A DNA stretch of 64,000 nucleotides from Haliotis rubra. Its lineage: Eukaryota. Below, one piece after another: positions 1-41,400 of this stretch. The notes beneath the pieces are model-generated. The model was not told where the DNA came from, ran no database searches, and worked only from the letters and a program-made list of their open reading frames with translations. Within the stretch, counting starts at the first letter, position 1. Every line of letters begins with the position of its first letter. The translations under genes and the position numbers were made by a program. The stretch is taken from assembly GCF_003918875.1 (NCBI RefSeq), contig NW_025765003.1, positions 4,588,001-4,652,000 of the forward strand, given 5' to 3'.

Positions 1-100
1 CTGGATTTGGTAGTGCAAGTATGCTTGGTAATAGAACTTCAAGTAAGCATAATACAATTCATATTCTCATTTTGAATTTTTTGCTACATATTACTTTATA

Positions 101-1283
101 AACTGAGGGGCAAAAGAAACGTCCCCGATCATTTTTTTATCATAAAATGATACAAACACGTGCAATTCAATGTTGAAATGTTTTATATAATTGTTGAACA
201 TATTATGCAGACTGTCATTACAGAACAATTGAAACAATTTGCTGTAAGTAGAGTTTTTGTAACGTTTTTCACAGGAGGTTCAAATGTCCGGGTTTCGATC
301 ATGACAACACATGCACATCAGTACTGACAGAGTGTCTTTGAGTGTCCAACTCTTCAGTAGCGAGTGTGTCCACCTCTTGCAGCGATACATGCTGCCACAC
401 GACGTCGTGCAGAGTGCACAAGACGTCTGATCACGTGATCTGGGATGCGACGCCATTCTTCCTGTAGAGCTTGAGCCAAAGCAACAACGTGCTGTGCGTT
501 CGTTCCGACGTCTGTAGACTCGTACCCGACCATCAGCTTTGTTCAACTGGAAGCGGCTCTCGTCACTGAAGAGTACCCGGCGCCAGTTCCGCGGCTGCCA
601 CTGCCGATCTCTACGTGCCCAAGCCAAGCGACGACGTCGATGTTCACGCGTTAACGTCACGCCCCGGAATGGTCTGTAGGCACTGATACCGAATCGGCGG
701 AGTCGTCTGGATATGGTCCTTCTACTGACTGGATGGGTAAGGCTGGTTGTTGCTGATGACGTCACAGTCAGGAATCTGTTGCGCAAGTGAAGCACCCGTA
801 AATGGCGGTCTTCCTGAGGGGTGGTTACGGGTGGTCTCCCTGTCCTAGGCCTGTCTGCAGTCCGACCTGTTGTTCTGAAGCGTGTCATCAGTCTGGTGAT
901 GGTTTTCTTGCTGCAACCCATGATTCTTGCAACGTGACTGTGAGAAGCACCCAGCTGCAACATCCCAATAGCTCGTTCTCTCTGTTCTGCCGTGAGTCGA
1001 GGCATGTTCTTTGTGTCCAACGTATTGAAGTGATGAATTCGAACAGTCGAGCATAATTTTTATACTGTACTTTCATACGGGTATGTTTCCACCGAAGCAT
1101 GCAAAAAACGTGAATAAAAGCAATTTTCATGCTTACAAAAAACTCCACGTGGATTTCCTTTCTGTGAGACGTGGGGATGCGTTCGGGAGATGTGTTCCTA
1201 AATAAATTTCCGTCATAACGACAACAGAAGAACTGTTTTTTCAAATTTTACTTTGGGGACGTTTCTTCTTTTGCCCCTCAGTT
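101..1283 (-). mobile_element. Tc1/mariner DNA transposon, internally deleted
   Basis: TIRs aactgaggggcaaaagaaacgtcccc (101-) and ggggacgtttcttcttttgcccctcagtt (-1283), flanked by TA on both sides. Encloses a Tc1 transposase ORF. Confidence 0.92.
280..1020 (-). pseudogene. Tc1-like transposase, deleted in the DDE domain
   Basis: HTH 'MPRLTAEQRERAIGML', GRP motif and first catalytic 'VLFSDESRF'. Near 480 the sequence jumps to the C-terminal 'LQEEWRRIP...AARGGHTRY' in another frame, so the middle of the DDE domain is missing. Confidence 0.88.
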
Positions 1284-13105: not shown

Positions 13106-15723
13106 TGTTTCCAGTGTAGAGCTACAGATTAATGACAGGGTGGGTAGTGCATACCAACAACATACTTACCAACAAAATGCATGTCTAGATTTCCTGGAAA
13201 ACCATTCCATTATAAGCAGGGATGGATGGTTCTATAAATGTACCCCTGGTTGTATTTAGCTTGATAGACCGTTTACATGACACTTTTACCCCAGGGAATA
13301 CCCCCGGGGGTAACTGAATTTGCTCCACCTCTTGACCAGGGGCAGAATACCCCCATGTGGGTATAATTTACCCCCCTGTTAGACCCGTTTATACGACACA
13401 ATTTGCCTCTCAGGGGTATTTTAACCCCATGTGGTATTTTACCCCCGGGGGCAAAGGGGTGCATGTAAACAAGGCTTTAGACGTTCTATCGTTCGTACGC
13501 TGCAACTGAAGTCATTAGCAATGACTCGAGCATGTTGACCAGCGTGCGGACGTCCAATAGCTTGTTGTGGTTGATCTTTCGTTAACCTAGTCATAGCTGC
13601 TGTGTTCAGAAAACAAGTGAACGATTGCCATTCAAGCCGGCAATTTATGCCAGAATGCATTTATGATGCACGTGCATCTCGATTTCAATGTTGTGTTTGT
13701 GGGAACTTTTCCCTCTCCAAAAAAACAAAAACATTTCTAACTTCAATCTCAAACAATACTTTATTGGGCAATGCATGTTTCCTCAAACTTGACTTCTGGT
13801 GTATATTTAAAAAATAGGTTCAAATACTCCTTTGATACTCAAATGTCATTTCTAATATTACGACGTTTCTTTTGCCTTTCAGTAGATTCTAGTACTTTGT
13901 GGGTTTTTGAATTCCACCGCTGATTTTGTATGTGTGCTGGCGATTAGGTACCTCACTCCGAGAGAGTGGGTTCGAATCCCGGATGGGACTCAACCCAACA
14001 AAAGTACCAGAATATGTACTTTACTAAGAAAGTCCAATCCCAAATATAACATAGGTTGGATCTGTATATTGGTGGAGTGAATGGCTGATGGTAATGTCTG
14101 AATGATATCTGGTTCAACAACATCCACATAGCATTTGTTGTGTTCATACGCCACGTGAACCACATAGCATTTGTTGTGTTCATACGCCACGTGAAAACTG
14201 CTTAATAATATAAACACACTTATGCTCACAGTTATCAGTGTTGGTAAGTAATACATACATCCTGCTCTTCCAGAAATCCGGGTTGGGTGGTTTTTCCGGG
14301 AACGGAGATATACAGTTAGTGACCCTGACCTTCGCACTTCCGGGATTATGGCCTCCAACACAAAAGGCGTAAGTAACAATGCTATGTTGAAGGCATGCAA
14401 CAATTCTCGTCTTTGTTAAAACAGGAGGTAAACATAGTCACGTGGCCGGTCTTAAACAGCACTGTGGCGGATCCAGAAGTTGTTTTCGAATAGTTTTTTT
14501 TTTACAGATACCCACTTTTGAAATACTTATATAAACCATCCAACTGACCCAAATAGACGAACTACCTTCCTGGTATAATTGTCTGTTTGTTAAAGGGCGT
14601 TTATGTCAGAATCAGTTTGTGTTTAGGTCATTCGGTGCATGCAGCATATTACCGGACAGGGTTTAAATTAAAAGGTTAATGCTGCGCTATTTCGGAGTCT
14701 TTAAAATACCAAAACGAAATCAACAGAATCCTTGTAAGTTGCTTTTGCCAACCAAATTTGCTTAATTGGAGTATTTATTGAGATCTTGATCAATAAATAC
14801 CTCAACAAAGACATCAAAATAACAAAATATCTGGTTTGGTTTGGTACTTCACAAGCCAACAAAATATTAAACCATGTAATTTTCTCTGCAAATAGACATA
14901 TTTATTTAGGTAATATCAAAAAAAACAATTCCCAATTTAATTAACTATCTGAAAACTTTAGATTTCATCCCATATCTCAATCATTGACTATGTTCAACCA
15001 CCCTGTAGAAGCTGGTATGTGTCAATGTAATTTACTGGTATGTTGCTTCTGTTACCGAGGCGGCAGTGTAGCCCAGTGGTTGAGTGGTTGACCCGGGTTC
15101 TATTCCCCATATGGGTACTTTGTGTGGACCTGTCTCTGATGTCTATGATATTGCTGGAGTGTTCCTAAAAGCGAGGTTACGCTAACTCACTCATTTCTGT
15201 TACAATAATATGTTTGCATCTATGTAACTATGGGAATGAATAAACACACACACACACACACACAAAAACACACACACAAACAACACACACACACACACAC
15301 ACACACACATTGCTTAATTAACGAAATATGCAAACAATTTAAAAAACGACGTGAAAGATGTATTCTATGAACACTCGGTGTTATCTCTGATTTGTAGTGA
15401 TTCATTTATACAGTTTTCATACATCTCTACGGCTAATAATCGACAATCGAATATTCTCTGGAGATGACGTGTTAAACGTCTGTGATTTCCTCCCGTTTGG
15501 TGAGCAAAGGACATGTTCAAGGTCAGAATGGCTACTACCAACGAATTTGCGAATACATCATGGGGACATTTCGCTGAAATATTATAAAATAAAAAAGTAA
15601 AATCACAGGTCTAAGAAAAAGATAATGTCACTCATTATGAAAAGCAAGGGACAAGGTGTGAAAAGTGCGTTTTGTATTTATAAATGTTATAAAAATATCC
15701 AATTAGAACAAGTTCATAGGTTT

Positions 15724-15983
15724 GAGTGAGTGAGAGTTTAGTTTTACGCCGCACTCAGCAATATTCCAGCTATTTGGCGGCTGTCTGTTAATAATCGAGT
15801 CTGGACCAGACAATCCACTGATCAACAGCATGAGCATCGATCTACGCATCTGGGATACGATGACATGTGTCAAATAAGTCAGCGAGCCTGACCACCCGAT
15901 CCCGTTAGTCGCCTATTACGATAATCATGGGTTACTAAAGATCTTTTCTTAAAGAGCAATTCTAACCCTGATCTTGACGGGTC
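15724..15983 (-). mobile_element. SINE family B, full length
   Basis: Family-B consensus with TSD tcatag(g/a)tttgag on both sides. Confidence 0.85.
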
Positions 15984-16209
15984 TCATAGATTTGAGAATT
16001 TGACCTTCACATGCATAGGTAAGACTAGAATTTGTCGTAAAGATTTCTTAACATCAGCACTAGAACAAACTTTTAGCGAAAGCTCATTTTCTTTGGAAAA
16101 GACGATCATGGCAATACAGTCTTAGGGTAATGTGTATCTTGGGTCAAAGACTTGCTTACAGTTCCCTTTTTTCAAACTGTTGTAACCATTTAATGTCCTT
16201 TGTCATGTC

Positions 16210-16322
16210 AAAAGTGTAAACCCTGAAAGCGAAAGAATGAAAAAGGACAATGGACGCCGTTCTATATATTAAACAGGTCTGACGTAAACAGAGAGAACGT
16301 ACCCAGTTTGGGGGATTACTTC
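16210..16322 (+). promoter_or_regulatory. Putative promoter of the TIFA-like gene: IRF-E/ISRE-like, TATA, CRE-like and kappaB-like motifs
   Basis: aaaagtgtaaacc (16210), gaaagcgaaag (16225), tatatattaaa (16263), tgacgtaa (16280), ggggattact (16311). Candidate 5'UTR intron 16335-16546 (gtaaat...ttttccatccatag) ends 9 nt before the ATG. Confidence 0.45.
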
Positions 16323-16555
16323 ATAACAAACAACGTAAATAATTTAAAAAGTGTGTCGATTGTGACTTACACGTCTGTTGTTTGCATGTTGCCAAAACGC
16401 TCCACTACATTTCTTGTGTACGTCAGTCTATACAATACTGTCTTTACCCTGTATAATACGTTGTTATTTCCCTTTGTACTGGGCAAACAATGGTCTTTAG
16501 ATTTGACAGTTACCTTGCCCTATCGAGATATGTTTTCCATCCATAGAGTACCACG

Positions 16556-17359
16556 ATGAAAGACACGTCTGCAGCCACAGTGGAAGCACCCAGTCGTCTG
16601 CTGATGTTCTACCAACCAACCCTCAGTAACAGTATCTCAGCGTACTTCCCTTGTCACGTGATCAGAAAACATGTTGGAGAGAAGGTGACCGTAGGTCGAA
16701 GTTCATGTGCAGACGTTCGGTTGAACGACGAGCGTATGTCAAGGACGTACGCGGAGATCTGGAACGATGGGAGGGACCCATTTGTCTTCAAAATCCGTAA
16801 CATCAGCGAGAGGAAGATGTTGCTGGTCGACAGCAAAGTACTGAATAAGGATGAGCAGGCTTCCATCAAAGATAACTGTACCCTTAAACTTGATTTTGTA
16901 GAACTTCTCCTGAAGGTGTGCCCGGGAGACGCCATTGCGGAGACCTACGAAGTCAGCGTTATCAAGAACGCTGTGGTCGGCAGGGGGCCTCTATGTGGCT
17001 TTGGGTCTTCTTATGGAGACACCGTCCCATCATCCTCACTCCTACGTTGTCTCATGTCCCCCACAGACTCCGAGGGGCACCGTGCGACTGGGAAAGATCC
17101 TGCAAACTCTCTCCAACCCCTTTCCCACGAGCCTCTAAGCAAAGGTTCAAAAAATGACCTTGACTCTGGTTACGTCTTCGACACAAGTGGAAAGTATCGC
17201 CCAAACATTCCAGCCAATCACCATCCAGCATCCATCCCGCGGTGCCACGACTGCCTGAGAGCAGTTCCTGGTAAGAGAGGGTTATCTCCTTGCGAAAATA
17301 GTGACGTCATCAACGATGGTACAACAGACGAAAATATCGCGCTTGATAATGTGTTGTGA
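16556..17359 (+). CDS. TIFA: TIFA-like FHA-domain TRAF-binding adaptor, 267 aa, single coding exon
   Basis: Collinear similarity to remembered human TIFA: AATVEA~DADTEET (pThr9), LLMFYQP~LQMTVYHP, VGRSS~FGRNS, DERMSR~DKQVSR, FKIRNISERKMLLVDSKVL~FEIKNMSKKTNLIVDSREL, SPCENSD~SPTEMDE (TRAF6 motif). Confidence 0.8.
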   Translation: MKDTSAATVEAPSRLLMFYQPTLSNSISAYFPCHVIRKHVGEKVTVGRSSCADVRLNDERMSRTYAEIWNDGRDPFVFKIRNISERKMLLVDSKVLNKDEQASIKDNCTLKLDFVELLLKVCPGDAIAETYEVSVIKNAVVGRGPLCGFGSSYGDTVPSSSLLRCLMSPTDSEGHRATGKDPANSLQPLSHEPLSKGSKNDLDSGYVFDTSGKYRPNIPANHHPASIPRCHDCLRAVPGKRGLSPCENSDVINDGTTDENIALDNVL

Positions 17360-19385: not shown

Positions 19386-19723
19386 TGCCAAACCAGAATT
19401 TATTTCACAGATTAAGTTTTGTAAAGTGGTCAATCGAACCCGGGTCTTCGATCTGACGAGCGAAAGCTTTAACCACTAGGCTACCCCACCGACCAAATAC
19501 AACTTGTGTCATAAGTGTTCGGGTCCGACTGTGATACCTGGTGCTTTGATCATGCTATTGACCATGTGTTTGACTCATTTATGTAAGTGAAATAACTAGA
19601 ATATAGCTTCATGCGGCGTAAAACAACATACCAGCCAACAAACAAACACACGGCAAGGTGCACACATAGACGTGTTACACAGTATAAAACAGATGCTGGG
19701 TGGGGTTGCACAAAGTGAGCCCA

Positions 19724-20347
19724 GGTGACCGTAACTCCCCTACCTTAACATAGACTAACGACAGTCTTAGCGCTAAGGTGACCGTAACTCCCCTACCTTA
19801 ACATAGACTAACGACAGTCTTAGCGCTAAGGTGACCGTAACTTCCATACATTAACATAGACTAACGACAGTCTTAGCGCTAAGGTGACCGTAACTCCCAC
19901 ACCTTAGCATAGACTAACGACAGTCTTAGCGCTAAGGTGACCGTAACTCCCACACCTTAGCATAGACTAACGACAGTCTCAGCGCTAAGGTGACCGTAAC
20001 TCCCACACCTTAACATAGACTAACGACAGTCTCAGCGCTAAGGTGACCGTAACTCCCACACCTTAGCATAGACTAACGACAGTCTCAGCGCTAAGGTGAC
20101 CGTAACTCCCACACCTTAGCATAGACTAACGACAGTCTCAGCGCTAAGGTGACCGTAACTCCCACACCTTAGCATAGACTAACGACAGTCTCAGCGCTAA
20201 GGTGACCGTAACTCCCACACCTTAGCATAGACTAACGACAGTCTTAGCGCTAAGGTGACCGTAACTCCCACACCTTAGCATAGACTAACGACAGTCTCAG
20301 CGCTAAGGTGACCGTAACTTCCATACATTAACATAGACTAACGACAG
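19724..20347. repeat. 53-bp tandem repeat, about 12 copies
   Basis: Unit ggtgaccgtaactcccacaccttagcatagactaacgacagtctcagcgctaa; copies are near-identical. Confidence 0.95.
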
Positions 20348-35330: not shown

Positions 35331-35459
35331 CTAATAAGTCTTCCGTCTTTTCTGGAGCCACAAGTGCAGCGGCAAAAGACTGTTTCTCTGCTGCAGTCGT
35401 CCATCAAACACATTGAAGTCACAATTCTGCAAGGACTTCAGATACCATTCACATACCAC
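35331..35459 (-). CDS. NDUFAF6: NDUFAF6 exon 10 (terminal)
   Basis: [42 protein letters not shown]; acceptor gtttgcag. Confidence 0.9.
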   Translation of the reverse strand: MVCEWYLKSLQNCDFNVFDGRLQQRNSLLPLHLWLQKRRKTY

Positions 35460-38400
35460 CTGCAAACAATGTAGACACACAAATATTGTTAGTAATTGTC
35501 ACATTGTTACATTGTCCTGGTGAGGGTATGTGTTTTGGACTGGTTGTGTTGATAGTGATGAGGATGGTGGATAATGGTGAGGATGGTGGATAATGGTGAG
35601 GATGGTGGATAATGGTCAGGGTGGTGGATAATGGATAGGCGTGAGGATGGTGGATAGTGGTGAGGATGGTGGATAATGGATAGTGGTGAGGATGATGGAT
35701 AATGGTGAGGATGATGGATAGTGGTGAGGACGGTGGACAATGGATAGTGGTGAGGAAGGTGGACAATGGATAGTGATGTGGATGGTTGACAATGATTAGT
35801 GATGAGGATGGTGGACAATGGATAGTGGTGAGGATGGTGGATAGTGGTGAGGATGGTGGACAATGGATAGTGGTGAGGATGGTGGACGATGGATAGTGGT
35901 GAGGATGGTGGATAATGGATAGTGGTGAGGATGGTGGACAATGGATAGTGGTGAGGATGGTTGATAATGGATAGTGGTGAGGATGGTGGATAACGGATAG
36001 TGAGGAGAATTGACAATGGATAGTGGTGAGGATGATGGATAATGGTGAGGATGGCGGATAATGGATAGTGAAGAGTATGGTGGACAATGGATAGTGGTGA
36101 GGATGGTGGACAATGGATAGTGGTGAGGATAATGGATAATGGTGAGGATGGTGGATAACGGACAGTGAGGAGGATGGTGGACAATGGTGAGGATGGTGGA
36201 TAACGGATAGTGAGGAGGATGGTGGACAATGGATAGTGGTGAGGATAATGGATAATGGTGAGGATGGTGGATAACGGAGAGTGAGGAGGATGGTGGACAA
36301 TGGATAGTGGTGAGGATGGTGGATAACGGATAGTGAGGAGGATGGTGGACAATGGATAGTGGTGAGGATGGTGGACAATGGATAGTGGTGAGGATGATGG
36401 ATAGTGGTGAGGATGGTGGATAATGGATAGTGGTGAGGATGGTGGATAATGGATAGTGGTGAGGATGGTGGACAATGGATAGTGGTGAGGATAATGGATA
36501 ATGGTGAGGATGGTGGATAACGGATAGTGGTGAGGATGGTGGATAGTGGTGAGGATGGTGGATAACGGATAGTGAGGAGGATGGTGGACAATGGATAGTG
36601 GTGAGGATGGTGGACAATGGATAGTGGTGAGGATGGTGGATAATGGATAGTGGTGAGGATGGTGGATAATGGATAGTGGTGAGGATGGTGGACAATGGCT
36701 AGTGGTGAGGATGGTGGACAATGGATAGTGGTGAGGATGGTGGATAATGGATAGTGGTGAGGATGGTTGATAATGGATAGTGGTGAGGATGGTTGATGAT
36801 GGATAGGTGAGGTGAGGAAGGTGGATAATGGTGAGGAAGGTGGATAATGTATAGTGATGAGGATGGTGGACAATGGATAGTGGTGAGGAAGGTGGATAAT
36901 GTATAGTGATGAGGATGGTGGATAATGTATAGTGGTGAGGAAGGTGGACAATGGATAGTGGTGAGGAAGGTGGATAATGTATAGTGATGAGGATGGTGGA
37001 CAATGGATAGTGGTGAGGATAATCGATAGTGGTGAGGATGGTGGACAATGGATAGTGATGAGGATGATGGACAATGGATAGTGGTGAGGATGGTGGACAA
37101 TGGATCGTGATGAGGATGGTGGATAATGGATAGTGATGAGGATGGTGGACAATGGATAGTGATGAGGATGGTGGACAATGGATAGTGGTGAGGATGGTGG
37201 ACAAAGGATAGTGGTGGATGGTGGATAATGGATAGTGGTGAGGATGGTGGATATGGAAAGATGTGAAAGATGATCGGGTAGATGGACATGTTTTATATGT
37301 TGTTTAATGTGATACTCAGTAATTTTCCAGCTGAATGTCATCCCCATCCGTCATACAATGACATGCATCAACCCAGTCAGCAGGCCTGACCCTAAAATCC
37401 TTTACTCACAAAGCCTGGATTGATGAAGACCAGTTCTAAACCTGGCCTTCAACATTTATGTGGATAAGGAATGAGGTGGGGAAATTGTGTTGAAACTGTG
37501 TGTGGGATGAGATTGGAAATTGGGGACAGCTGTGTTGATTGTGGTGAATACAGGATTAGATTGGAGGTAGGTGATGTGATATACTGCCACCTAGTTACTG
37601 TTCAACAGTAGTCCAGACTCACTCAAATGTACTCACCGTGTTCAGGAACACCAGACTGGCTTCCTTTGGAACATCCTTCGAGAATGATCTTGCCTGGAAC
37701 AAAACACCTTTAAGTAAACAGACATTGTGACATACCCCACAGACATGGATGCTTGAGATTCAATACCAGTAACAAGATCAAGAATATTTAGGACAAATCC
37801 TGAAGCTATTAGAGCACCTGCCTTGAGCAAGTGAGTTTACCTTTATGCCAGGCACTTTTGGTATTCCAGCAGTATCACAGCGATATTACAGCGGGGGACA
37901 CAGGAAATTGGCTTCACACATTGTAACCATGTGGGGAATCAAACCTGGGTCTTTGGCATGATGATAGAATGCCTTAACCACTAGGCTACCACACCACCCC
38001 CTTAAGGCATAAGGGAAAACACGATGAAATATGAGAAAACACTGAAGTTATCAGTGCAGTAAACCATTTGACCACACACCCTAAAGTCGTTATACACAAA
38101 CCCTGAGTCTTTTAGGGAACATATACACACCCTGAAACAGGATGCCTCCAATAATACTCTCACAGGTAACACATATACACAGGGCTAGAAATAACTTTAA
38201 AATTGCTAGTGTACTCCGGTACAGTGGCACAAGTAAAATCACTTGCCCTGATAATTTTTCCACTATACTGGCCGATTTTCTTGTTGATTTTTTAAATAAA
38301 TAACATAATTAAGATTGGAAAGTCAACTGGACACCGGTACAGTGTGACAGACAAATATGCTTTCCCAACAGCAAAAAGCACTGGACTCGGGCGTCGGGCA

Positions 38401-41400
38401 CTGGGTTATTTCCACCCCTGATACATATACATATCTGCACATACCATGTTCCAGTAGAGTACTTACAGGTAGTGTGTTGTATGGGGACGTACTGCCCTCT
38501 TGTCTAAGGTGCTGTAATTTGCACTGTAGAGTTGCTTCCCTTACATGTGATACAATCCAGCGATCATGTGTTCAGTTCCAAACTAAACTCACTGACTGAC
38601 CCACACTATTTGGTGGCAGATACTCACTGTTGCCAGGTGCTTGTGTGCTGAGCTGGCCAGATCGTACATGACATCTTTCACTGCCTGCTCATCTCTGCCT
38701 CGGATGATCTTCTCCTGGGATACCTTGTGCTGGGAACAGATGATTGTGACTGGTGAGTGATATACATACTGCAGGTGGCTGGGCCTGGAGCAAGCGAACC
38801 AGTCACCAATGTGTCTTGGATTTAAACTCCACCTGGGTATAGTGTCACATTTCATTTCATGAAGTGCTCAGGGATGATATAACCTACATTAACAATCATA
38901 CCTAGGGGTAGATAAACCTGACTCCTATTGGCATGGTCTACCTTAACAATCACAACTCAGGTGAGATACACCTGACATCTTCTGGCACTATCTAACAATA
39001 ACATCTATGGCATGATACACCTGACACCTGGCATTGTCTACCTTAACAATCACACCCCTGGTCAGATACACCCAATATCTTTTGGCATTGTCTGACTTAA
39101 CAATCAGGTCTAGGTGCAGATACACCTGATCCCTTCTGGCATTGCTTACCTTAACAATCAGATCAAGAGGTAGATACACCCGACTACTGCTGGCATGGTA
39201 TTGTGTTGAACGTACCAGTGTGACCAGGCCTTGAGTCTTATCAACATAACTTACCTTAACAATCAGATCAACAGGTAAATACACTCGACACCTGCTGGCA
39301 TGGCTTACCTTAACAAACAGATCTAGAGGTAGATACACCCGACTCCTACTGGCATGGTATGGTGTTGAACGTAGCAGTGTGACCAGGCCCTGAGTCTTAT
39401 CAACAGAACTTACCTTAACAATCAGATCTACAGGTAAATACACTCAACACCTGCTGGCATGGCTTACCTTAACAATCAGATCTAGAGGTAAATACACCCG
39501 ACTCCTACTGGCATGGTATGGTGCTAAACGTAGCAGTGTAACCAGGCCCTGAGTCTTATCAACAGAACTTACCTTAACAATCAGATCTACAGGTAAATAC
39601 ACTCAACACCTGCTGGCATGGCTTACCTTAACAATCAGATCTAGAGGTAAATACACCCGACTCCTACTGGCATGGTATGGTGCTAAACGTAGCAGTGTAA
39701 CCAGGCCCTGAGTCTTATCAACATAACTTACCTTAACAATCAGATCTACAGGTAAATACACTCAACACCTGCTGGCATGGCTTACCTTAACAATCAGATC
39801 TAGAGGTAAATACACCCGACTCCTACTGGCATGGTATGGTGCTAAACGTAGCAGTGTAACCAGGCCCTGAGTCTTATCAACATAACTTACCTTAACAATC
39901 AGATCTACAGGTAAATACACTCAACACCTGCTGGCATGGCTTACCTTAACAATCAGATCTAGAGGTAAATACACCCGACTCCTGCTAGCATGGTATGGTG
40001 TTGAACGTAGCAGTGTGACCAGGCCCTGAGTCTTGCCAATGTGACTGGCAGCATGATCAGCATGTACATTCTTTATTCCTTGAAGAAAACATAGTACAAA
40101 TATTGTTGCCATTGTAGTTCACATGATAGCACTACAGTTGCCTTGTATCCCTAATGACAACTGGAGTACAACATGCATGTGTCAGAGTATATTTTGTGCA
40201 ACACAATAAGGTATCCTAATTATGAAAACAATATCTCAGATTACTATAATTACACAGACAAAATGTAACAAATCAATTGCTTCCACAAGTCTCAGTTCAA
40301 CATGATATATTACAACATCTGGAACTGGACTAGACACTAGCTAGCCTGTGGACCTGTAAAGATCCGGGTTAGAATTGATCTTCACCAACCCATGCTTGTC
40401 GTAAAAGGCGACTAACAGGATTTGGTAGGTCTGGATCGCTGACTTAATTGAAACATGACATTGTATCCCAATTGCGTAGGTCTATGCTCATGCTGTTTAT
40501 CACTGGATTGTCTGGTCCTGACTCAATTATTTACAGACCGTCGCCATATAGCTGGAATACTGCTGAGTGCGGCGTTAAACAACAAACCAACCAAGCTAGC
40601 CTGTGGGAAGAGCCTCCCTTTCACCATTGTGAAGGTGAAGGTCAGCCTCCTGGTTTATGTCCGCCCATCTCACCGAGACACTCCAGGAGCAGGTACATGA
40701 TGGAAGACACAGTGTTCTCAGCATACGCCTCCACCTCCGCAGTGTTCCTGTAGCCCTGGTCTGACAGGTTATCTGCCTGCAACAGACAAACTCATATCAG
40801 AAATGGGCCTTTAACGCACAAAATCATGTCATACTTCTCATCAATGCACACACAAACAGACATTATACACAGTGCCTGCAACACGACAGCAGCGAACCCG
40901 TGTGCAAATCGCGATTATGTCGGAAAGCGCATGTTACCTGCACCATACAAACATACATCATACATGTCACTTGCCACTATTATCTACAAATGGTTGTACA
41001 ATATCCTACCCTTGCTTCTATGATCCGTGTCAGCCATTTCCTTGTCAGTTTGAAGTGATGAATAGCCTGAAACGCAGAACATATAAACTAGCCCAGAGCT
41101 ACAGATAACTTTTTGGGTCATTGAGTTATGTACTCCCTTGTGTTCATCTCAATTGGGTATCCTAATTTTCCTTTGAGTAACCAAATAAATTGTACTCACC
41201 TCAATCAAACTCATTTGGGTATTTTGCCATTTTCCATTAATTTTAAAAATGTAATTTTTAGAGTAAAATTGATATTTTATACTTATCCTGACTCATGCTC
41301 ATTTGCTTGTCTTCTTCTTCTTGCGAACATAGTGGAAACACTTGTATCTCCTTAATTGAAGCTCCCTTCAATGTAAAATCACTAATTAGTACTCACCACG

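What the first reader, a model, noticed from the sequence alone, without database searches (positions are those of the whole stretch)
16556..17359. Apparent invertebrate (molluscan) TIFA: the adaptor of the ALPK1-TIFA-TRAF6 ADP-heptose sensing pathway
Seen in sequence: an intact 267-aa single-exon ORF with Thr8 in 'AATVEA', an FHA domain with the conserved GR, SR and N residues, and C-terminal 'SPCENSD' (P-x-E-x-x-D, nt 17288-17305). Established: in mammals ALPK1 binds bacterial ADP-heptose and phosphorylates TIFA Thr9. pThr9-FHA binding then oligomerises TIFAsomes, and the PxExxE motif recruits TRAF6 to activate NF-kB. This pathway is characterised in vertebrates. Inference: all three functional elements are retained here in a likely lophotrochozoan genome, along with a probable non-coding first exon. 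That implies an ancestral or uncharacterised invertebrate TIFAsome pathway. The linker between the FHA domain and the TRAF motif is roughly 80 aa longer than in human TIFA.
Basis: partly seen in the sequence, partly recalled or inferred. Interest (0 to 1): 0.85.

Follow-up and report, generated by a model that had tools for sequence, protein, structure and literature searches.

The report
Abalone TIFA-family immune adaptor gene
This abalone gene encodes a genuine relative of vertebrate TIFA, the adaptor that relays detection of the bacterial sugar ADP-heptose to TRAF6 and NF-kB; related genes sit next to ALPK1 sensor-kinase genes in a worm and in amphioxus, although two recent papers say both genes are absent outside vertebrates.

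Summary
It is exon 2 of a two-exon Haliotis rubra gene.

The TIFA reading holds:
- An exhaustive search finds about 26 relatives in gastropods, a bivalve, octopus, an annelid and amphioxus. None is named TIFA.
- They share one layout: a Thr 4-6 residues before the first strand, an FHA module, a long linker and a terminal PxExx(acidic/aromatic) TRAF6-type motif.
- That motif occurs in 22 of 29 proteins, against 0.6 expected by chance.
- A family profile ranks TIFA chains first in the PDB (E 1.4e-7), then TIFAB.
- A confident model (pLDDT 89) matches TIFA/TIFAB at Z 17.5-18.7 over 129-136 residues. All other FHA domains reach Z 12 or less.
- In Owenia and Branchiostoma the family member lies head-to-head with a gene carrying the ALPK1 ADP-heptose-binding domain (both) and an alpha-kinase domain (ALPK1-type in Owenia).

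Not shown: an ALPK1 gene in abalone (none in this window or near eight other molluscan or unassigned loci), phosphorylation, oligomerisation or TRAF6 binding. It is a new member of a known family, and it contradicts published claims that the pathway is confined to vertebrates.

The parts
14348..14368 (+). Coding part of exon 1 (MASNTKG) with the true start codon; a GTAAGT donor follows at 14369
   Evidence: The degenerate back-translation of MASNTKG matches once in the window and 0 times in 100 shuffles. Sequence read. The annotated 277-aa protein P0001 begins with these residues.
14369..16546 (+). Phase-0 intron (GT...AG)
   Evidence: The donor GTAAGT is at 14369 and the acceptor ...ccatag ends at 16546. 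Joining the two exons reproduces the P0001 N-terminus MASNTKG|STTMKD. The called gene spans 3012 bp, which equals 14348-17359.
16547..17359 (+). Exon 2 coding region: residues 8-277 plus the stop codon.
16577..16579 (+).
   Evidence: A Thr occupies this place in all 27 family N-termini printed. The structural alignment ranges run model 16..152 against TIFA 7..148 and model 19..153 against TIFA 10..149. That offset of 9 puts Thr18 opposite TIFA residue 9. This stretch of the model has pLDDT of only about 65.
16586..16975 (+). TIFA-type extended FHA module (protein residues about 21-150). The Pfam FHA core is 16685-16891. Phosphothreonine-pocket residues are G57-R58, S72-R73 and R91-N92.
   Evidence: Pfam FHA match. 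AF2 model with pLDDT above 90 over residues 21-150. Foldseek and VIA-align give TIFA/TIFAB as top hits. The profile alignment places GR, SR and (K/R)N opposite TIFA G50-R51, S66-R67 and K88-N89.
16976..17287 (+). Linker of about 105 residues, poorly conserved, with short conserved islands (CLM, NIP, C..L)
   Evidence: Identity falls outside the FHA module, and only short islands align between Haliotis and the other gastropods. Disorder was not shown: the full-length model failed.
17288..17305 (+). PCENSD, which fits the TRAF6-binding consensus P-x-E-x-x-(acidic/aromatic), 22 residues from the C-terminus
   Evidence: The motif is conserved in three Haliotis species. A motif fitting the same consensus lies within the last 30 residues of 22 of 29 family proteins, against 0.6 +/- 0.76 in 2000 shuffles. 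The consensus is as quoted in PMC12457700.

Best explanation
The gene at 14348-17359 (+) of this Haliotis rubra window encodes a 277-aa member of the TIFA family, a co-orthologue of vertebrate TIFA/TIFAB. It has three parts: an N-terminal threonine (Thr18), a TIFA-type extended FHA domain, and a long linker ending in a TRAF6-binding-type motif (PCENSD). The most likely mechanism follows TIFA. A stimulus-activated kinase phosphorylates Thr18. The phosphothreonine is bound by the FHA domain of another molecule (pocket residues R58, S72/R73, R91/N92), which drives oligomerisation. The clustered C-terminal motifs then recruit and activate TRAF6, which is present in the H. rubra genome, leading to Rel/NF-kB signalling. 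The ancestral kinase for this family is most probably an ALPK1 orthologue, because family members lie head-to-head with ALPK1 genes in an annelid and in amphioxus. What is shown: the gene structure, fold, family, motif conservation and synteny in other phyla. What is inferred: phosphorylation, oligomerisation, TRAF6 binding, the identity of the kinase in abalone, and ADP-heptose as the trigger.
For: Family: an exhaustive phmmer search of 1.84 billion representatives gives 28 hits, and in almost all of them the match spans the N-terminus plus FHA module. The named ones come from Littorina, Pomacea, Babylonia, Lottia, Haliotis (a second paralogue), Potamilus, Octopus, Owenia and Branchiostoma.
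Sequence: the 26-sequence profile A4 hits TIFA chains at E 1.4e-7 to 1.5e-6 (31-34.5 bits), aligned to mouse TIFA residues 42-144. TIFAB scores 2e-4, and the best other FHA protein scores 2.3e-4 at 24 bits. The E-value improved in steps from 0.3 with a single sequence to 0.006 with six sequences.
Structure: the AF2 model has pLDDT 89.1. Foldseek ranks 1-8 are all TIFA/TIFAB, with E 1e-10 to 3e-8 and TM 0.79-0.81; the next hit is at 5e-6 with TM 0.62. VIA-align gives Z 17.5-18.7 over 129-136 residues for TIFA/TIFAB, against Z 12.0 or less over 110 residues or fewer for EmbR, KIF13A, Rad53, MDC1, Chk2 and Ki67.
Motifs: a Thr precedes strand 1 in all 27 N-termini. The terminal PxExx[DEFWY] motif is present in 22 of 29 proteins, against 0.6 expected.
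Synteny: Branchiostoma P0034 and Owenia P0036 each lie about 2-5 kb from a divergent Alpha_kinase gene. Exons of those genes match the human ALPK1 ADP-heptose-binding domain, 5Z2C residues 206-290, at E 4.8e-10 and 6.9e-12. The Owenia kinase exon matches the ALPK1 kinase domain at 1.8e-19, against 3e-5 for eEF2K.
Partner: TRAF6 is reported in the H. rubra genome (PMC11103948). The Atlas language-model search also puts the chordate TIFA cluster first at 0.93.
Against: No alpha-kinase is detectable in the 64-kb window, which gives 14 kb upstream and 46 kb downstream of the gene. None is detectable within 10 kb of the family members in Lottia, Pomacea (two genes), Potamilus, Babylonia, H. asinina (the paralogue) or Octopus. 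I could not search the rest of the abalone genome, so ALPK1 may be unlinked or lost in molluscs.
Single-sequence similarity to TIFA is not significant (E 0.3), and vertebrate TIFA was not among the phmmer hits.
The residues of TIFA's central dimer hydrogen-bond network (E86, K108, D110) are K89, Q111 and S113 in the abalone protein by the profile register.
No vertebrate TIFA sequences could be obtained by id, so no joint phylogeny was built.
There are no expression or biochemical data.
AF2 was trained on the PDB, which includes TIFA. Against that, the same protein with a shallow alignment gave no fold at all, so the fold came from the family alignment.
Confidence: 0.72

Rival explanations
1. 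It is a TIFA-family adaptor that molluscs have uncoupled from ALPK1. Thr18 is phosphorylated by a different kinase, or the protein works constitutively, and it feeds TRAF6 downstream of other receptors such as TLR/MyD88, TNFR or IL-17R-like receptors. ADP-heptose plays no part.
For: No ALPK1 lies next to any of the molluscan family members examined. Molluscs have two diverged paralogue groups, which suggests functional diversification. From my own knowledge, not tested here, TIFA was first described as a TRAF6 adaptor before ALPK1 was known.
Against: The Thr-x-x-x-Pro context before strand 1 and the FHA pocket residues are conserved from amphioxus and annelid, where ALPK1 is linked, through to abalone. 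That argues for the same kind of kinase-substrate relation. Loss of linkage is not loss of the gene.
Confidence: 0.2
2. It is a TIFAB-like negative regulator. It would heterodimerise with the second Haliotis paralogue (group B) and damp signalling rather than transmit it.
For: The TIFAB structure matches the model almost as well as TIFA does (Z 18.3). Haliotis has a second paralogue (P0033).
Against: By my recollection of TIFAB, not tested here, it lacks both the N-terminal Thr and the TRAF6 motif. The abalone protein keeps both, and they are conserved in three Haliotis species and in the sister gastropod clade.
Confidence: 0.04
3. It is an unrelated FHA-domain protein, and the Thr and PxExxD motifs resemble TIFA only by chance or convergence.
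For: Single-sequence similarity to TIFA is not significant. For this one protein the chance of a PxExx[DEFWY] motif somewhere in the tail is 5.9%.
Against: Profile ranking, fold ranking, motif conservation across at least three phyla and ALPK1 synteny all point the same way.
Confidence: 0.04

Closest known systems
Vertebrate TIFA (TRAF-interacting protein with FHA domain A; PDB 4ZGI, 4YM4, 6L9U)
   Same: It has the same three-part layout: an N-terminal phospho-acceptor Thr just before strand 1, an extended FHA fold of about 135 residues, and a C-terminal P-x-E-x-x-(acidic) TRAF6 motif. TIFA is the best sequence-profile match and the best structural match. The phosphothreonine-pocket residues GR, SR and (K/R)N are conserved.
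   Different: Identity is only about 20-22%. The linker is about 105 residues rather than about 30, so the protein is 277 aa against 184 aa (human length from my own knowledge). The sequence after the Thr is T-V-E-A. The residues of TIFA's central dimer hydrogen-bond network are not conserved. No adjacent ALPK1 gene lies in the 64-kb window. Molluscs carry two paralogue groups, and many relatives have 2-6 tandem T-V-(D/E) copies and doubled C-terminal motifs.
Vertebrate TIFAB (PDB 8WWY chain B)
   Same: It has the same extended FHA fold (Z 18.3) and is the seventh-ranked profile hit (E 2e-4).
   Different: By my recollection, not tested here, TIFAB has neither the N-terminal Thr nor a TRAF6 motif. 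The abalone protein has both.
ALPK1-TIFA gene pair and ADP-heptose sensing pathway of vertebrates
   Same: Family members in Owenia fusiformis and Branchiostoma lanceolatum lie head-to-head with genes that have the ALPK1-type N-terminal domain and an alpha-kinase domain. In both, the LPxPDKKG stretch is conserved. ALPK1 T237, which PMC10113258 places in the ADP-heptose site, is Ser.
   Different: The invertebrate kinases are about 860-870 aa; human ALPK1 is longer by my recollection. The pairing was not seen in any mollusc locus. Ligand specificity is unknown. The published view is that both genes are confined to vertebrates (PMC12457700; PMC11573728).

Membership tests
TIFA family | FHA domain with phosphothreonine-pocket residues (TIFA G50-R51, S66-R67, K88-N89) | tested here: met
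   Pfam FHA scores 26.7 bits against a 20.7-bit cutoff. G57-R58, S72-R73 and R91-N92 align to the TIFA residues in the profile alignment. R58 is invariant, and G57, R73 and N92 are at least 90% conserved across 26 relatives.
TIFA family | TIFA-type extended FHA fold (about 135 residues, larger than a canonical FHA domain) | tested here: met
   VIA-align gives Z 18.7, rmsd 2.3 A over 134 residues, with model 19-153 against TIFA 10-149. All non-TIFA FHA domains reach Z 12.0 or less over 110 residues or fewer. Foldseek TM is 0.79-0.81 for TIFA/TIFAB against 0.62 for the next match.
TIFA family | Closer in sequence to TIFA than to any other FHA family | tested here: met
   In the profile A4 search of the PDB, TIFA takes ranks 1-6 (E 1.4e-7 to 1.5e-6) and TIFAB rank 7. 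The best other FHA protein is about 10 bits below TIFA. No joint tree could be built, because no vertebrate TIFA sequence was obtainable by id.
TIFA family | N-terminal threonine (TIFA Thr9) that is phosphorylated and bound by the FHA domain in trans | tested here: inconclusive
   Thr18 is present and is conserved in position in all 27 relatives. The offset of the structural alignment ranges puts it opposite TIFA residue 9. Phosphorylation and binding in trans cannot be tested with these tools.
TIFA family | C-terminal TRAF6-binding motif P-x-E-x-x-(aromatic/acidic) | tested here: met
   PCENSD lies at residues 255-260, 22 residues from the C-terminus. The motif is terminal in 22 of 29 family proteins, against 0.6 expected. 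Actual TRAF6 binding is not testable here.
TIFA family | Constitutive dimer through the beta5/6/9 interface (TIFA E86-K108-D110 network) | tested here: inconclusive
   The network residues are listed in PMC7083832. By the profile register they correspond to K89, Q111 and S113 in abalone, so they are not conserved. The interface could have co-evolved. No multimer prediction was available.
TIFA family | Functional and genomic partner ALPK1 | tested here: inconclusive
   Relatives in Owenia and Branchiostoma lie next to ALPK1 orthologues. None is in the 64-kb abalone window or near seven other molluscan loci. The rest of the H. rubra genome could not be searched.
TIFAB | Has the FHA fold but, by my recollection of TIFAB, lacks the N-terminal Thr and the TRAF6 motif | tested here: not met
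   The abalone protein has both Thr18 and PCENSD.

The most novel reading that the evidence does not exclude
The ALPK1-TIFA cassette is not a vertebrate invention. It is an ancestral bilaterian gene pair, still physically linked head-to-head in an annelid and in amphioxus, and its TIFA half has duplicated in molluscs. If the invertebrate ALPK1 N-terminal domains still bind ADP-heptose or another NDP-heptose, cytosolic sensing of bacterial heptose metabolites predates vertebrates. That would overturn the published scenario that vertebrates evolved the pathway. The repeated T-V-(D/E) sites in many relatives, and similar DPSATTVD repeats in the kinases' own linkers, would then point to a multivalent phosphothreonine-FHA polymerisation scheme.
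Probability: 0.45. Interest if true: 0.85.

Novelty: new member of a known kind. Interest (0 to 1): 0.78.

Why it matters
Two recent papers state that TIFA and ALPK1 occur only in vertebrates (PMC12457700, PMC11573728). One of them builds an evolutionary scenario on that claim. Here a molluscan gene passes the sequence, fold and motif tests for TIFA. Its relatives in an annelid and in amphioxus are paired with ALPK1 orthologues that keep the ADP-heptose-binding domain. This makes invertebrate heptose sensing directly testable. It also adds an unannotated adaptor to the TRAF6/NF-kB toolkit of abalone, a farmed animal troubled by Vibrio disease. All family members found are currently labelled 'uncharacterized' or, in Octopus, are misnamed.

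Tried and rejected
- The single-sequence PDB search gave only non-significant TIFA hits (E 0.3). Significance came only with family profiles.
- Word-indexed searches never returned a vertebrate TIFA id, so I could not run hhalign against a TIFA alignment or build a joint tree.
- Full-length AF2 with the 6-sequence alignment failed (pLDDT 30), so it says nothing about the tail.
- The Atlas search with an Owenia ALPK1 N-domain exon gave only generic TPR-like clusters.
- tblastn of all ORF pieces (35 aa or longer) from the kinase side of L003 and L005 against the window gave one hit. It came from a piece on the kinase's non-coding strand and I discarded it. The same search against ten other loci gave nothing.
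- The bacterial promoter/terminator scan upstream of exon 1 is irrelevant to a eukaryote.
- Earlier scan notes hold nothing on ALPK1, TIFA or alpha-kinases in this genome.
- The 632-aa 'ORF' at 35449-37347 is a 26-bp satellite, not a gene.
- Literature searches for invertebrate TIFA or ALPK1 found no prior report in the held library. Subscription journals are not covered.

Full report
**Observation.** The 267-aa ORF at 16556-17359 (+) exists and is intact. The sequence shows Thr8 in AATVEA, the GR, SR and N residues of an FHA domain, and PCENSD at 17288-17305, all as described. Pfam FHA matches ORF residues 44-112 above its curated cutoff (E 7.6e-6, 26.7 bits against 20.7). The window is from Haliotis rubra. 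The ORF is 100% identical to the 277-aa RefSeq protein LOC124285210, and there are orthologues in H. asinina (88%) and H. cracherodii (78%).

The annotated protein carries ten extra N-terminal residues. The first seven (MASNTKG) are encoded at 14348-14368, followed by a GTAAGT donor. They are spliced in phase 0 to the acceptor at 16545-16546. In H. asinina the ORF's own ATG is an Ile codon.

**The family.** An exhaustive phmmer search of 1.84 billion representative proteins returned 28 hits at E 1e-3 or better. Two look like bacterial multi-FHA proteins. In nearly all the rest the match covers the N-terminus plus the FHA module. Cluster look-ups place the named members in these taxa:
- Gastropods: Littorina saxatilis, Pomacea canaliculata (two paralogues), Babylonia areolata, Lottia gigantea, and a second paralogue in Haliotis asinina.
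- Bivalve: Potamilus streckersoni.
- Cephalopod: Octopus bimaculoides.
- Annelid: Owenia fusiformis.
- Cephalochordate: Branchiostoma lanceolatum.

All are labelled 'uncharacterized' or 'FHA domain-containing'. The Octopus protein is misnamed as a splicing factor. None is called TIFA.

The members share one architecture. One to six copies of T-V-(D/E) come first, the last of them 4-6 residues before the first strand. The FHA module follows, then a long and poorly conserved linker. At the very C-terminus is a P-x-E-x-x-(acidic/aromatic) motif, for example PVENAEW, PQE(N/D)DER or PTEHEE. This fits the TRAF6-binding consensus as quoted in PMC12457700. The motif starts within the last 30 residues in 22 of 29 proteins, against 0.6 +/- 0.76 (maximum 4) in 2000 shuffles of the tails. 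A Thr sits before strand 1 in all 27 N-termini printed. The sequences are related, so these are not independent trials. However, the linkers between the FHA module and the motif are otherwise unalignable, so retention of the motif is meaningful.

**Is it TIFA?** Similarity to TIFA rises with profile depth, and every step keeps TIFA on top:
- Single sequence: the only FHA proteins among the weak PDB hits are TIFA chains, at E about 0.3.
- Six-sequence profile: E 0.006.
- Twenty-six-sequence profile: TIFA chains take ranks 1-6 at E 1.4e-7 to 1.5e-6, aligned to nearly the whole mouse TIFA domain (residues 42-144). TIFAB is seventh at 2e-4. The best non-TIFA FHA protein follows at 2.3e-4, about 10 bits below TIFA.

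The alignment places G57-R58, S72-R73 and R91-N92 opposite TIFA G50-R51, S66-R67 and K88-N89.

An AlphaFold2 model of residues 1-160, built on the 26-sequence alignment, is confident (pLDDT 89.1; residues 21-150 above 90). Foldseek ranks 1-8 are all TIFA/TIFAB (E 1e-10 to 3e-8, TM 0.79-0.81). The next match is the MEK1 FHA domain (5e-6, TM 0.62). VIA-align gives Z 17.5-18.7 over 129-136 residues for TIFA/TIFAB. Every other FHA domain, including EmbR, KIF13A, Rad53, MDC1, Chk2 and Ki67, reaches Z 12.0 or less over 110 residues or fewer. The start of the aligned ranges (model 16 opposite TIFA 7, model 19 opposite TIFA 10) puts Thr18 opposite TIFA position 9. That part of the model has pLDDT of only about 65.

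The same protein modelled with a shallow alignment gave no fold at all. The TIFA-like fold therefore came from the family alignment and not from recall of a template. A language-model feature search also ranks the chordate TIFA cluster first (0.93).

**Genomic partner.** In Branchiostoma lanceolatum the family member P0034 lies about 2 kb from a divergently transcribed 860-aa gene with a Pfam Alpha_kinase domain. In Owenia fusiformis P0036 lies about 4.6 kb from a divergent 869-aa Alpha_kinase gene. The two kinase genes match each other exon by exon and in the same order. One amphioxus exon matches the ADP-heptose-binding N-terminal domain of human ALPK1 (5Z2C residues 206-251, E 4.8e-10). The corresponding Owenia exon matches residues 207-290 (E 6.9e-12). 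In both, the LPxPDKKG stretch is kept. Both have Ser where ALPK1 has T237, a residue that PMC10113258 places in the ADP-heptose site. The Owenia kinase exon matches the ALPK1 kinase domain at 1.8e-19, against 3e-5 for eEF2K and 1.5e-4 for MHCK-A.

These neighbours are therefore ALPK1 orthologues. From memory, ALPK1 and TIFA are also neighbours on human 4q25; I did not test this here. A head-to-head ALPK1/TIFA-like pair in both a protostome and a deuterostome argues that the pair is ancestral to Bilateria and that this family is the TIFA lineage.

**What is missing for abalone.** tblastn with every ORF piece (35 aa or longer) from the kinase side of the two loci finds no alpha-kinase in the 64-kb window. 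The one hit came from a piece on the kinase's non-coding strand and was discarded. Nothing was found within 10 kb of the family members in Lottia, Pomacea (two genes), Potamilus, Babylonia, H. asinina (the paralogue), Octopus or two contigs of unknown taxon. I could not search the rest of the H. rubra genome, so ALPK1 in abalone is unlinked or lost, and I cannot say which. TRAF6, the proposed downstream partner, is reported for H. rubra with an oyster-like domain layout (PMC11103948).

A tree of the FHA modules shows two molluscan paralogue groups and one clade of non-molluscan members:
- Group A: this gene, Octopus, Littorina and Pomacea-A (support 94/93).
- Group B: the H. asinina paralogue, Lottia, Pomacea-B and Babylonia (85/81).
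- A clade holding the two ALPK1-linked genes (92/91).

The deep branches are weak and several branches are long, so I draw no conclusion about order. The residues of TIFA's central dimer network (E86, K108, D110; PMC7083832) are K89, Q111 and S113 in abalone by the profile register. Dimerisation is therefore untested.

**Mechanism.** The best-supported reading is that Thr18 is phosphorylated by an upstream kinase, ancestrally ALPK1. The phosphothreonine is then bound by the FHA pocket of another molecule, the adaptor oligomerises, and its C-terminal PCENSD motifs recruit TRAF6 to drive Rel/NF-kB signalling. Fold, family, motifs and synteny in other phyla are shown. Every signalling step is inferred.

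The main rival is that the same adaptor is uncoupled from ALPK1 in molluscs and serves other receptors. A TIFAB-like inhibitor role is unlikely because both motifs are retained. Chance resemblance is now very unlikely.

[quoted passage not shown] Eight literature searches found no report of an invertebrate TIFA or ALPK1 in the held library. Subscription journals are not covered. The gene is a new member of a known family rather than a new kind of system. It differs from TIFA in its long linker and in having a paralogue, and many relatives have multiple T-V-(D/E) sites. It extends the ALPK1-TIFA axis well beyond vertebrates and makes invertebrate heptose sensing testable.

Noticed in passing
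L003:1-7942 (-) and L005:1-5370 (-): ALPK1 orthologues in Branchiostoma lanceolatum and Owenia fusiformis carry the ADP-heptose-binding N-terminal domain, and the Owenia kinase exon is ALPK1-type. Each lies head-to-head with a TIFA-like gene. This contradicts published statements that ALPK1 is confined to vertebrates.
   Followed up: partly
L003:2042-2932 (-) and L005:1117-2205 (-): The large linker exon of the amphioxus ALPK1-like gene holds several copies of a DPSA(T)TVD-like motif, and the Owenia linker has ADPSATTVSS. The same T-V-D motif is repeated at the N-termini of the TIFA-like proteins. These may be autophosphorylation sites or FHA-docking sites on the kinase.
   Followed up: no
L003:10001-15666 (+), protein P0034: The amphioxus TIFA-like protein (569 aa) has two FHA modules, each preceded by T-V-D motifs. 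PVEHDD lies between them, and the second module has no terminal TRAF6 motif. This is either a tandem TIFA-like/TIFAB-like fusion or two adjacent genes merged by the annotation.
   Followed up: no
window:27104-29546 (+): A gene for an nSTAND3 NTPase (Pfam E 3.4e-14) followed by ankyrin repeats (E 1e-49). It is an NLR-like STAND protein about 10 kb downstream of the TIFA-like gene.
   Followed up: partly
window:35551-37257: A 26-bp satellite of about 62 copies with strong GC skew (0.59). It produces spurious ORFs of up to 632 aa on the minus strand and is not a gene.
   Followed up: yes
window:14124-14195: An exact 36-bp tandem duplication containing CACGTG E-box-like cores, about 150 bp upstream of the start codon of the TIFA-like gene. 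It could be a promoter element.
   Followed up: no
window:17536-17594: A 13/26-bp tandem repeat (CAGCTGGTGACCA, about 4 copies) roughly 180 bp downstream of the stop codon, probably in the 3' UTR.
   Followed up: no
window:280-1244 (-): A remnant of a Tc1/mariner-type transposase (HTH_Tnp_Tc3_2, E 5.7e-10).
   Followed up: partly
window:38884-40000 and 38988-39443 (-): An exon with an SQS_PSY match (NDUFAF6-like) sits inside arrays of 54-, 100- and 159-bp tandem repeats.
   Followed up: no
window:8945-9679 and 19723-20347: Two further satellites: a 32-33-bp unit of about 19 copies, and a 53-bp unit of about 12 copies at 97% identity.
   Followed up: no
L009 and L010: The group-B TIFA-like paralogues of Babylonia and Pomacea both have a short-chain dehydrogenase (adh_short) gene immediately downstream on the opposite strand. 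This is conserved microsynteny specific to that paralogue group.
   Followed up: no
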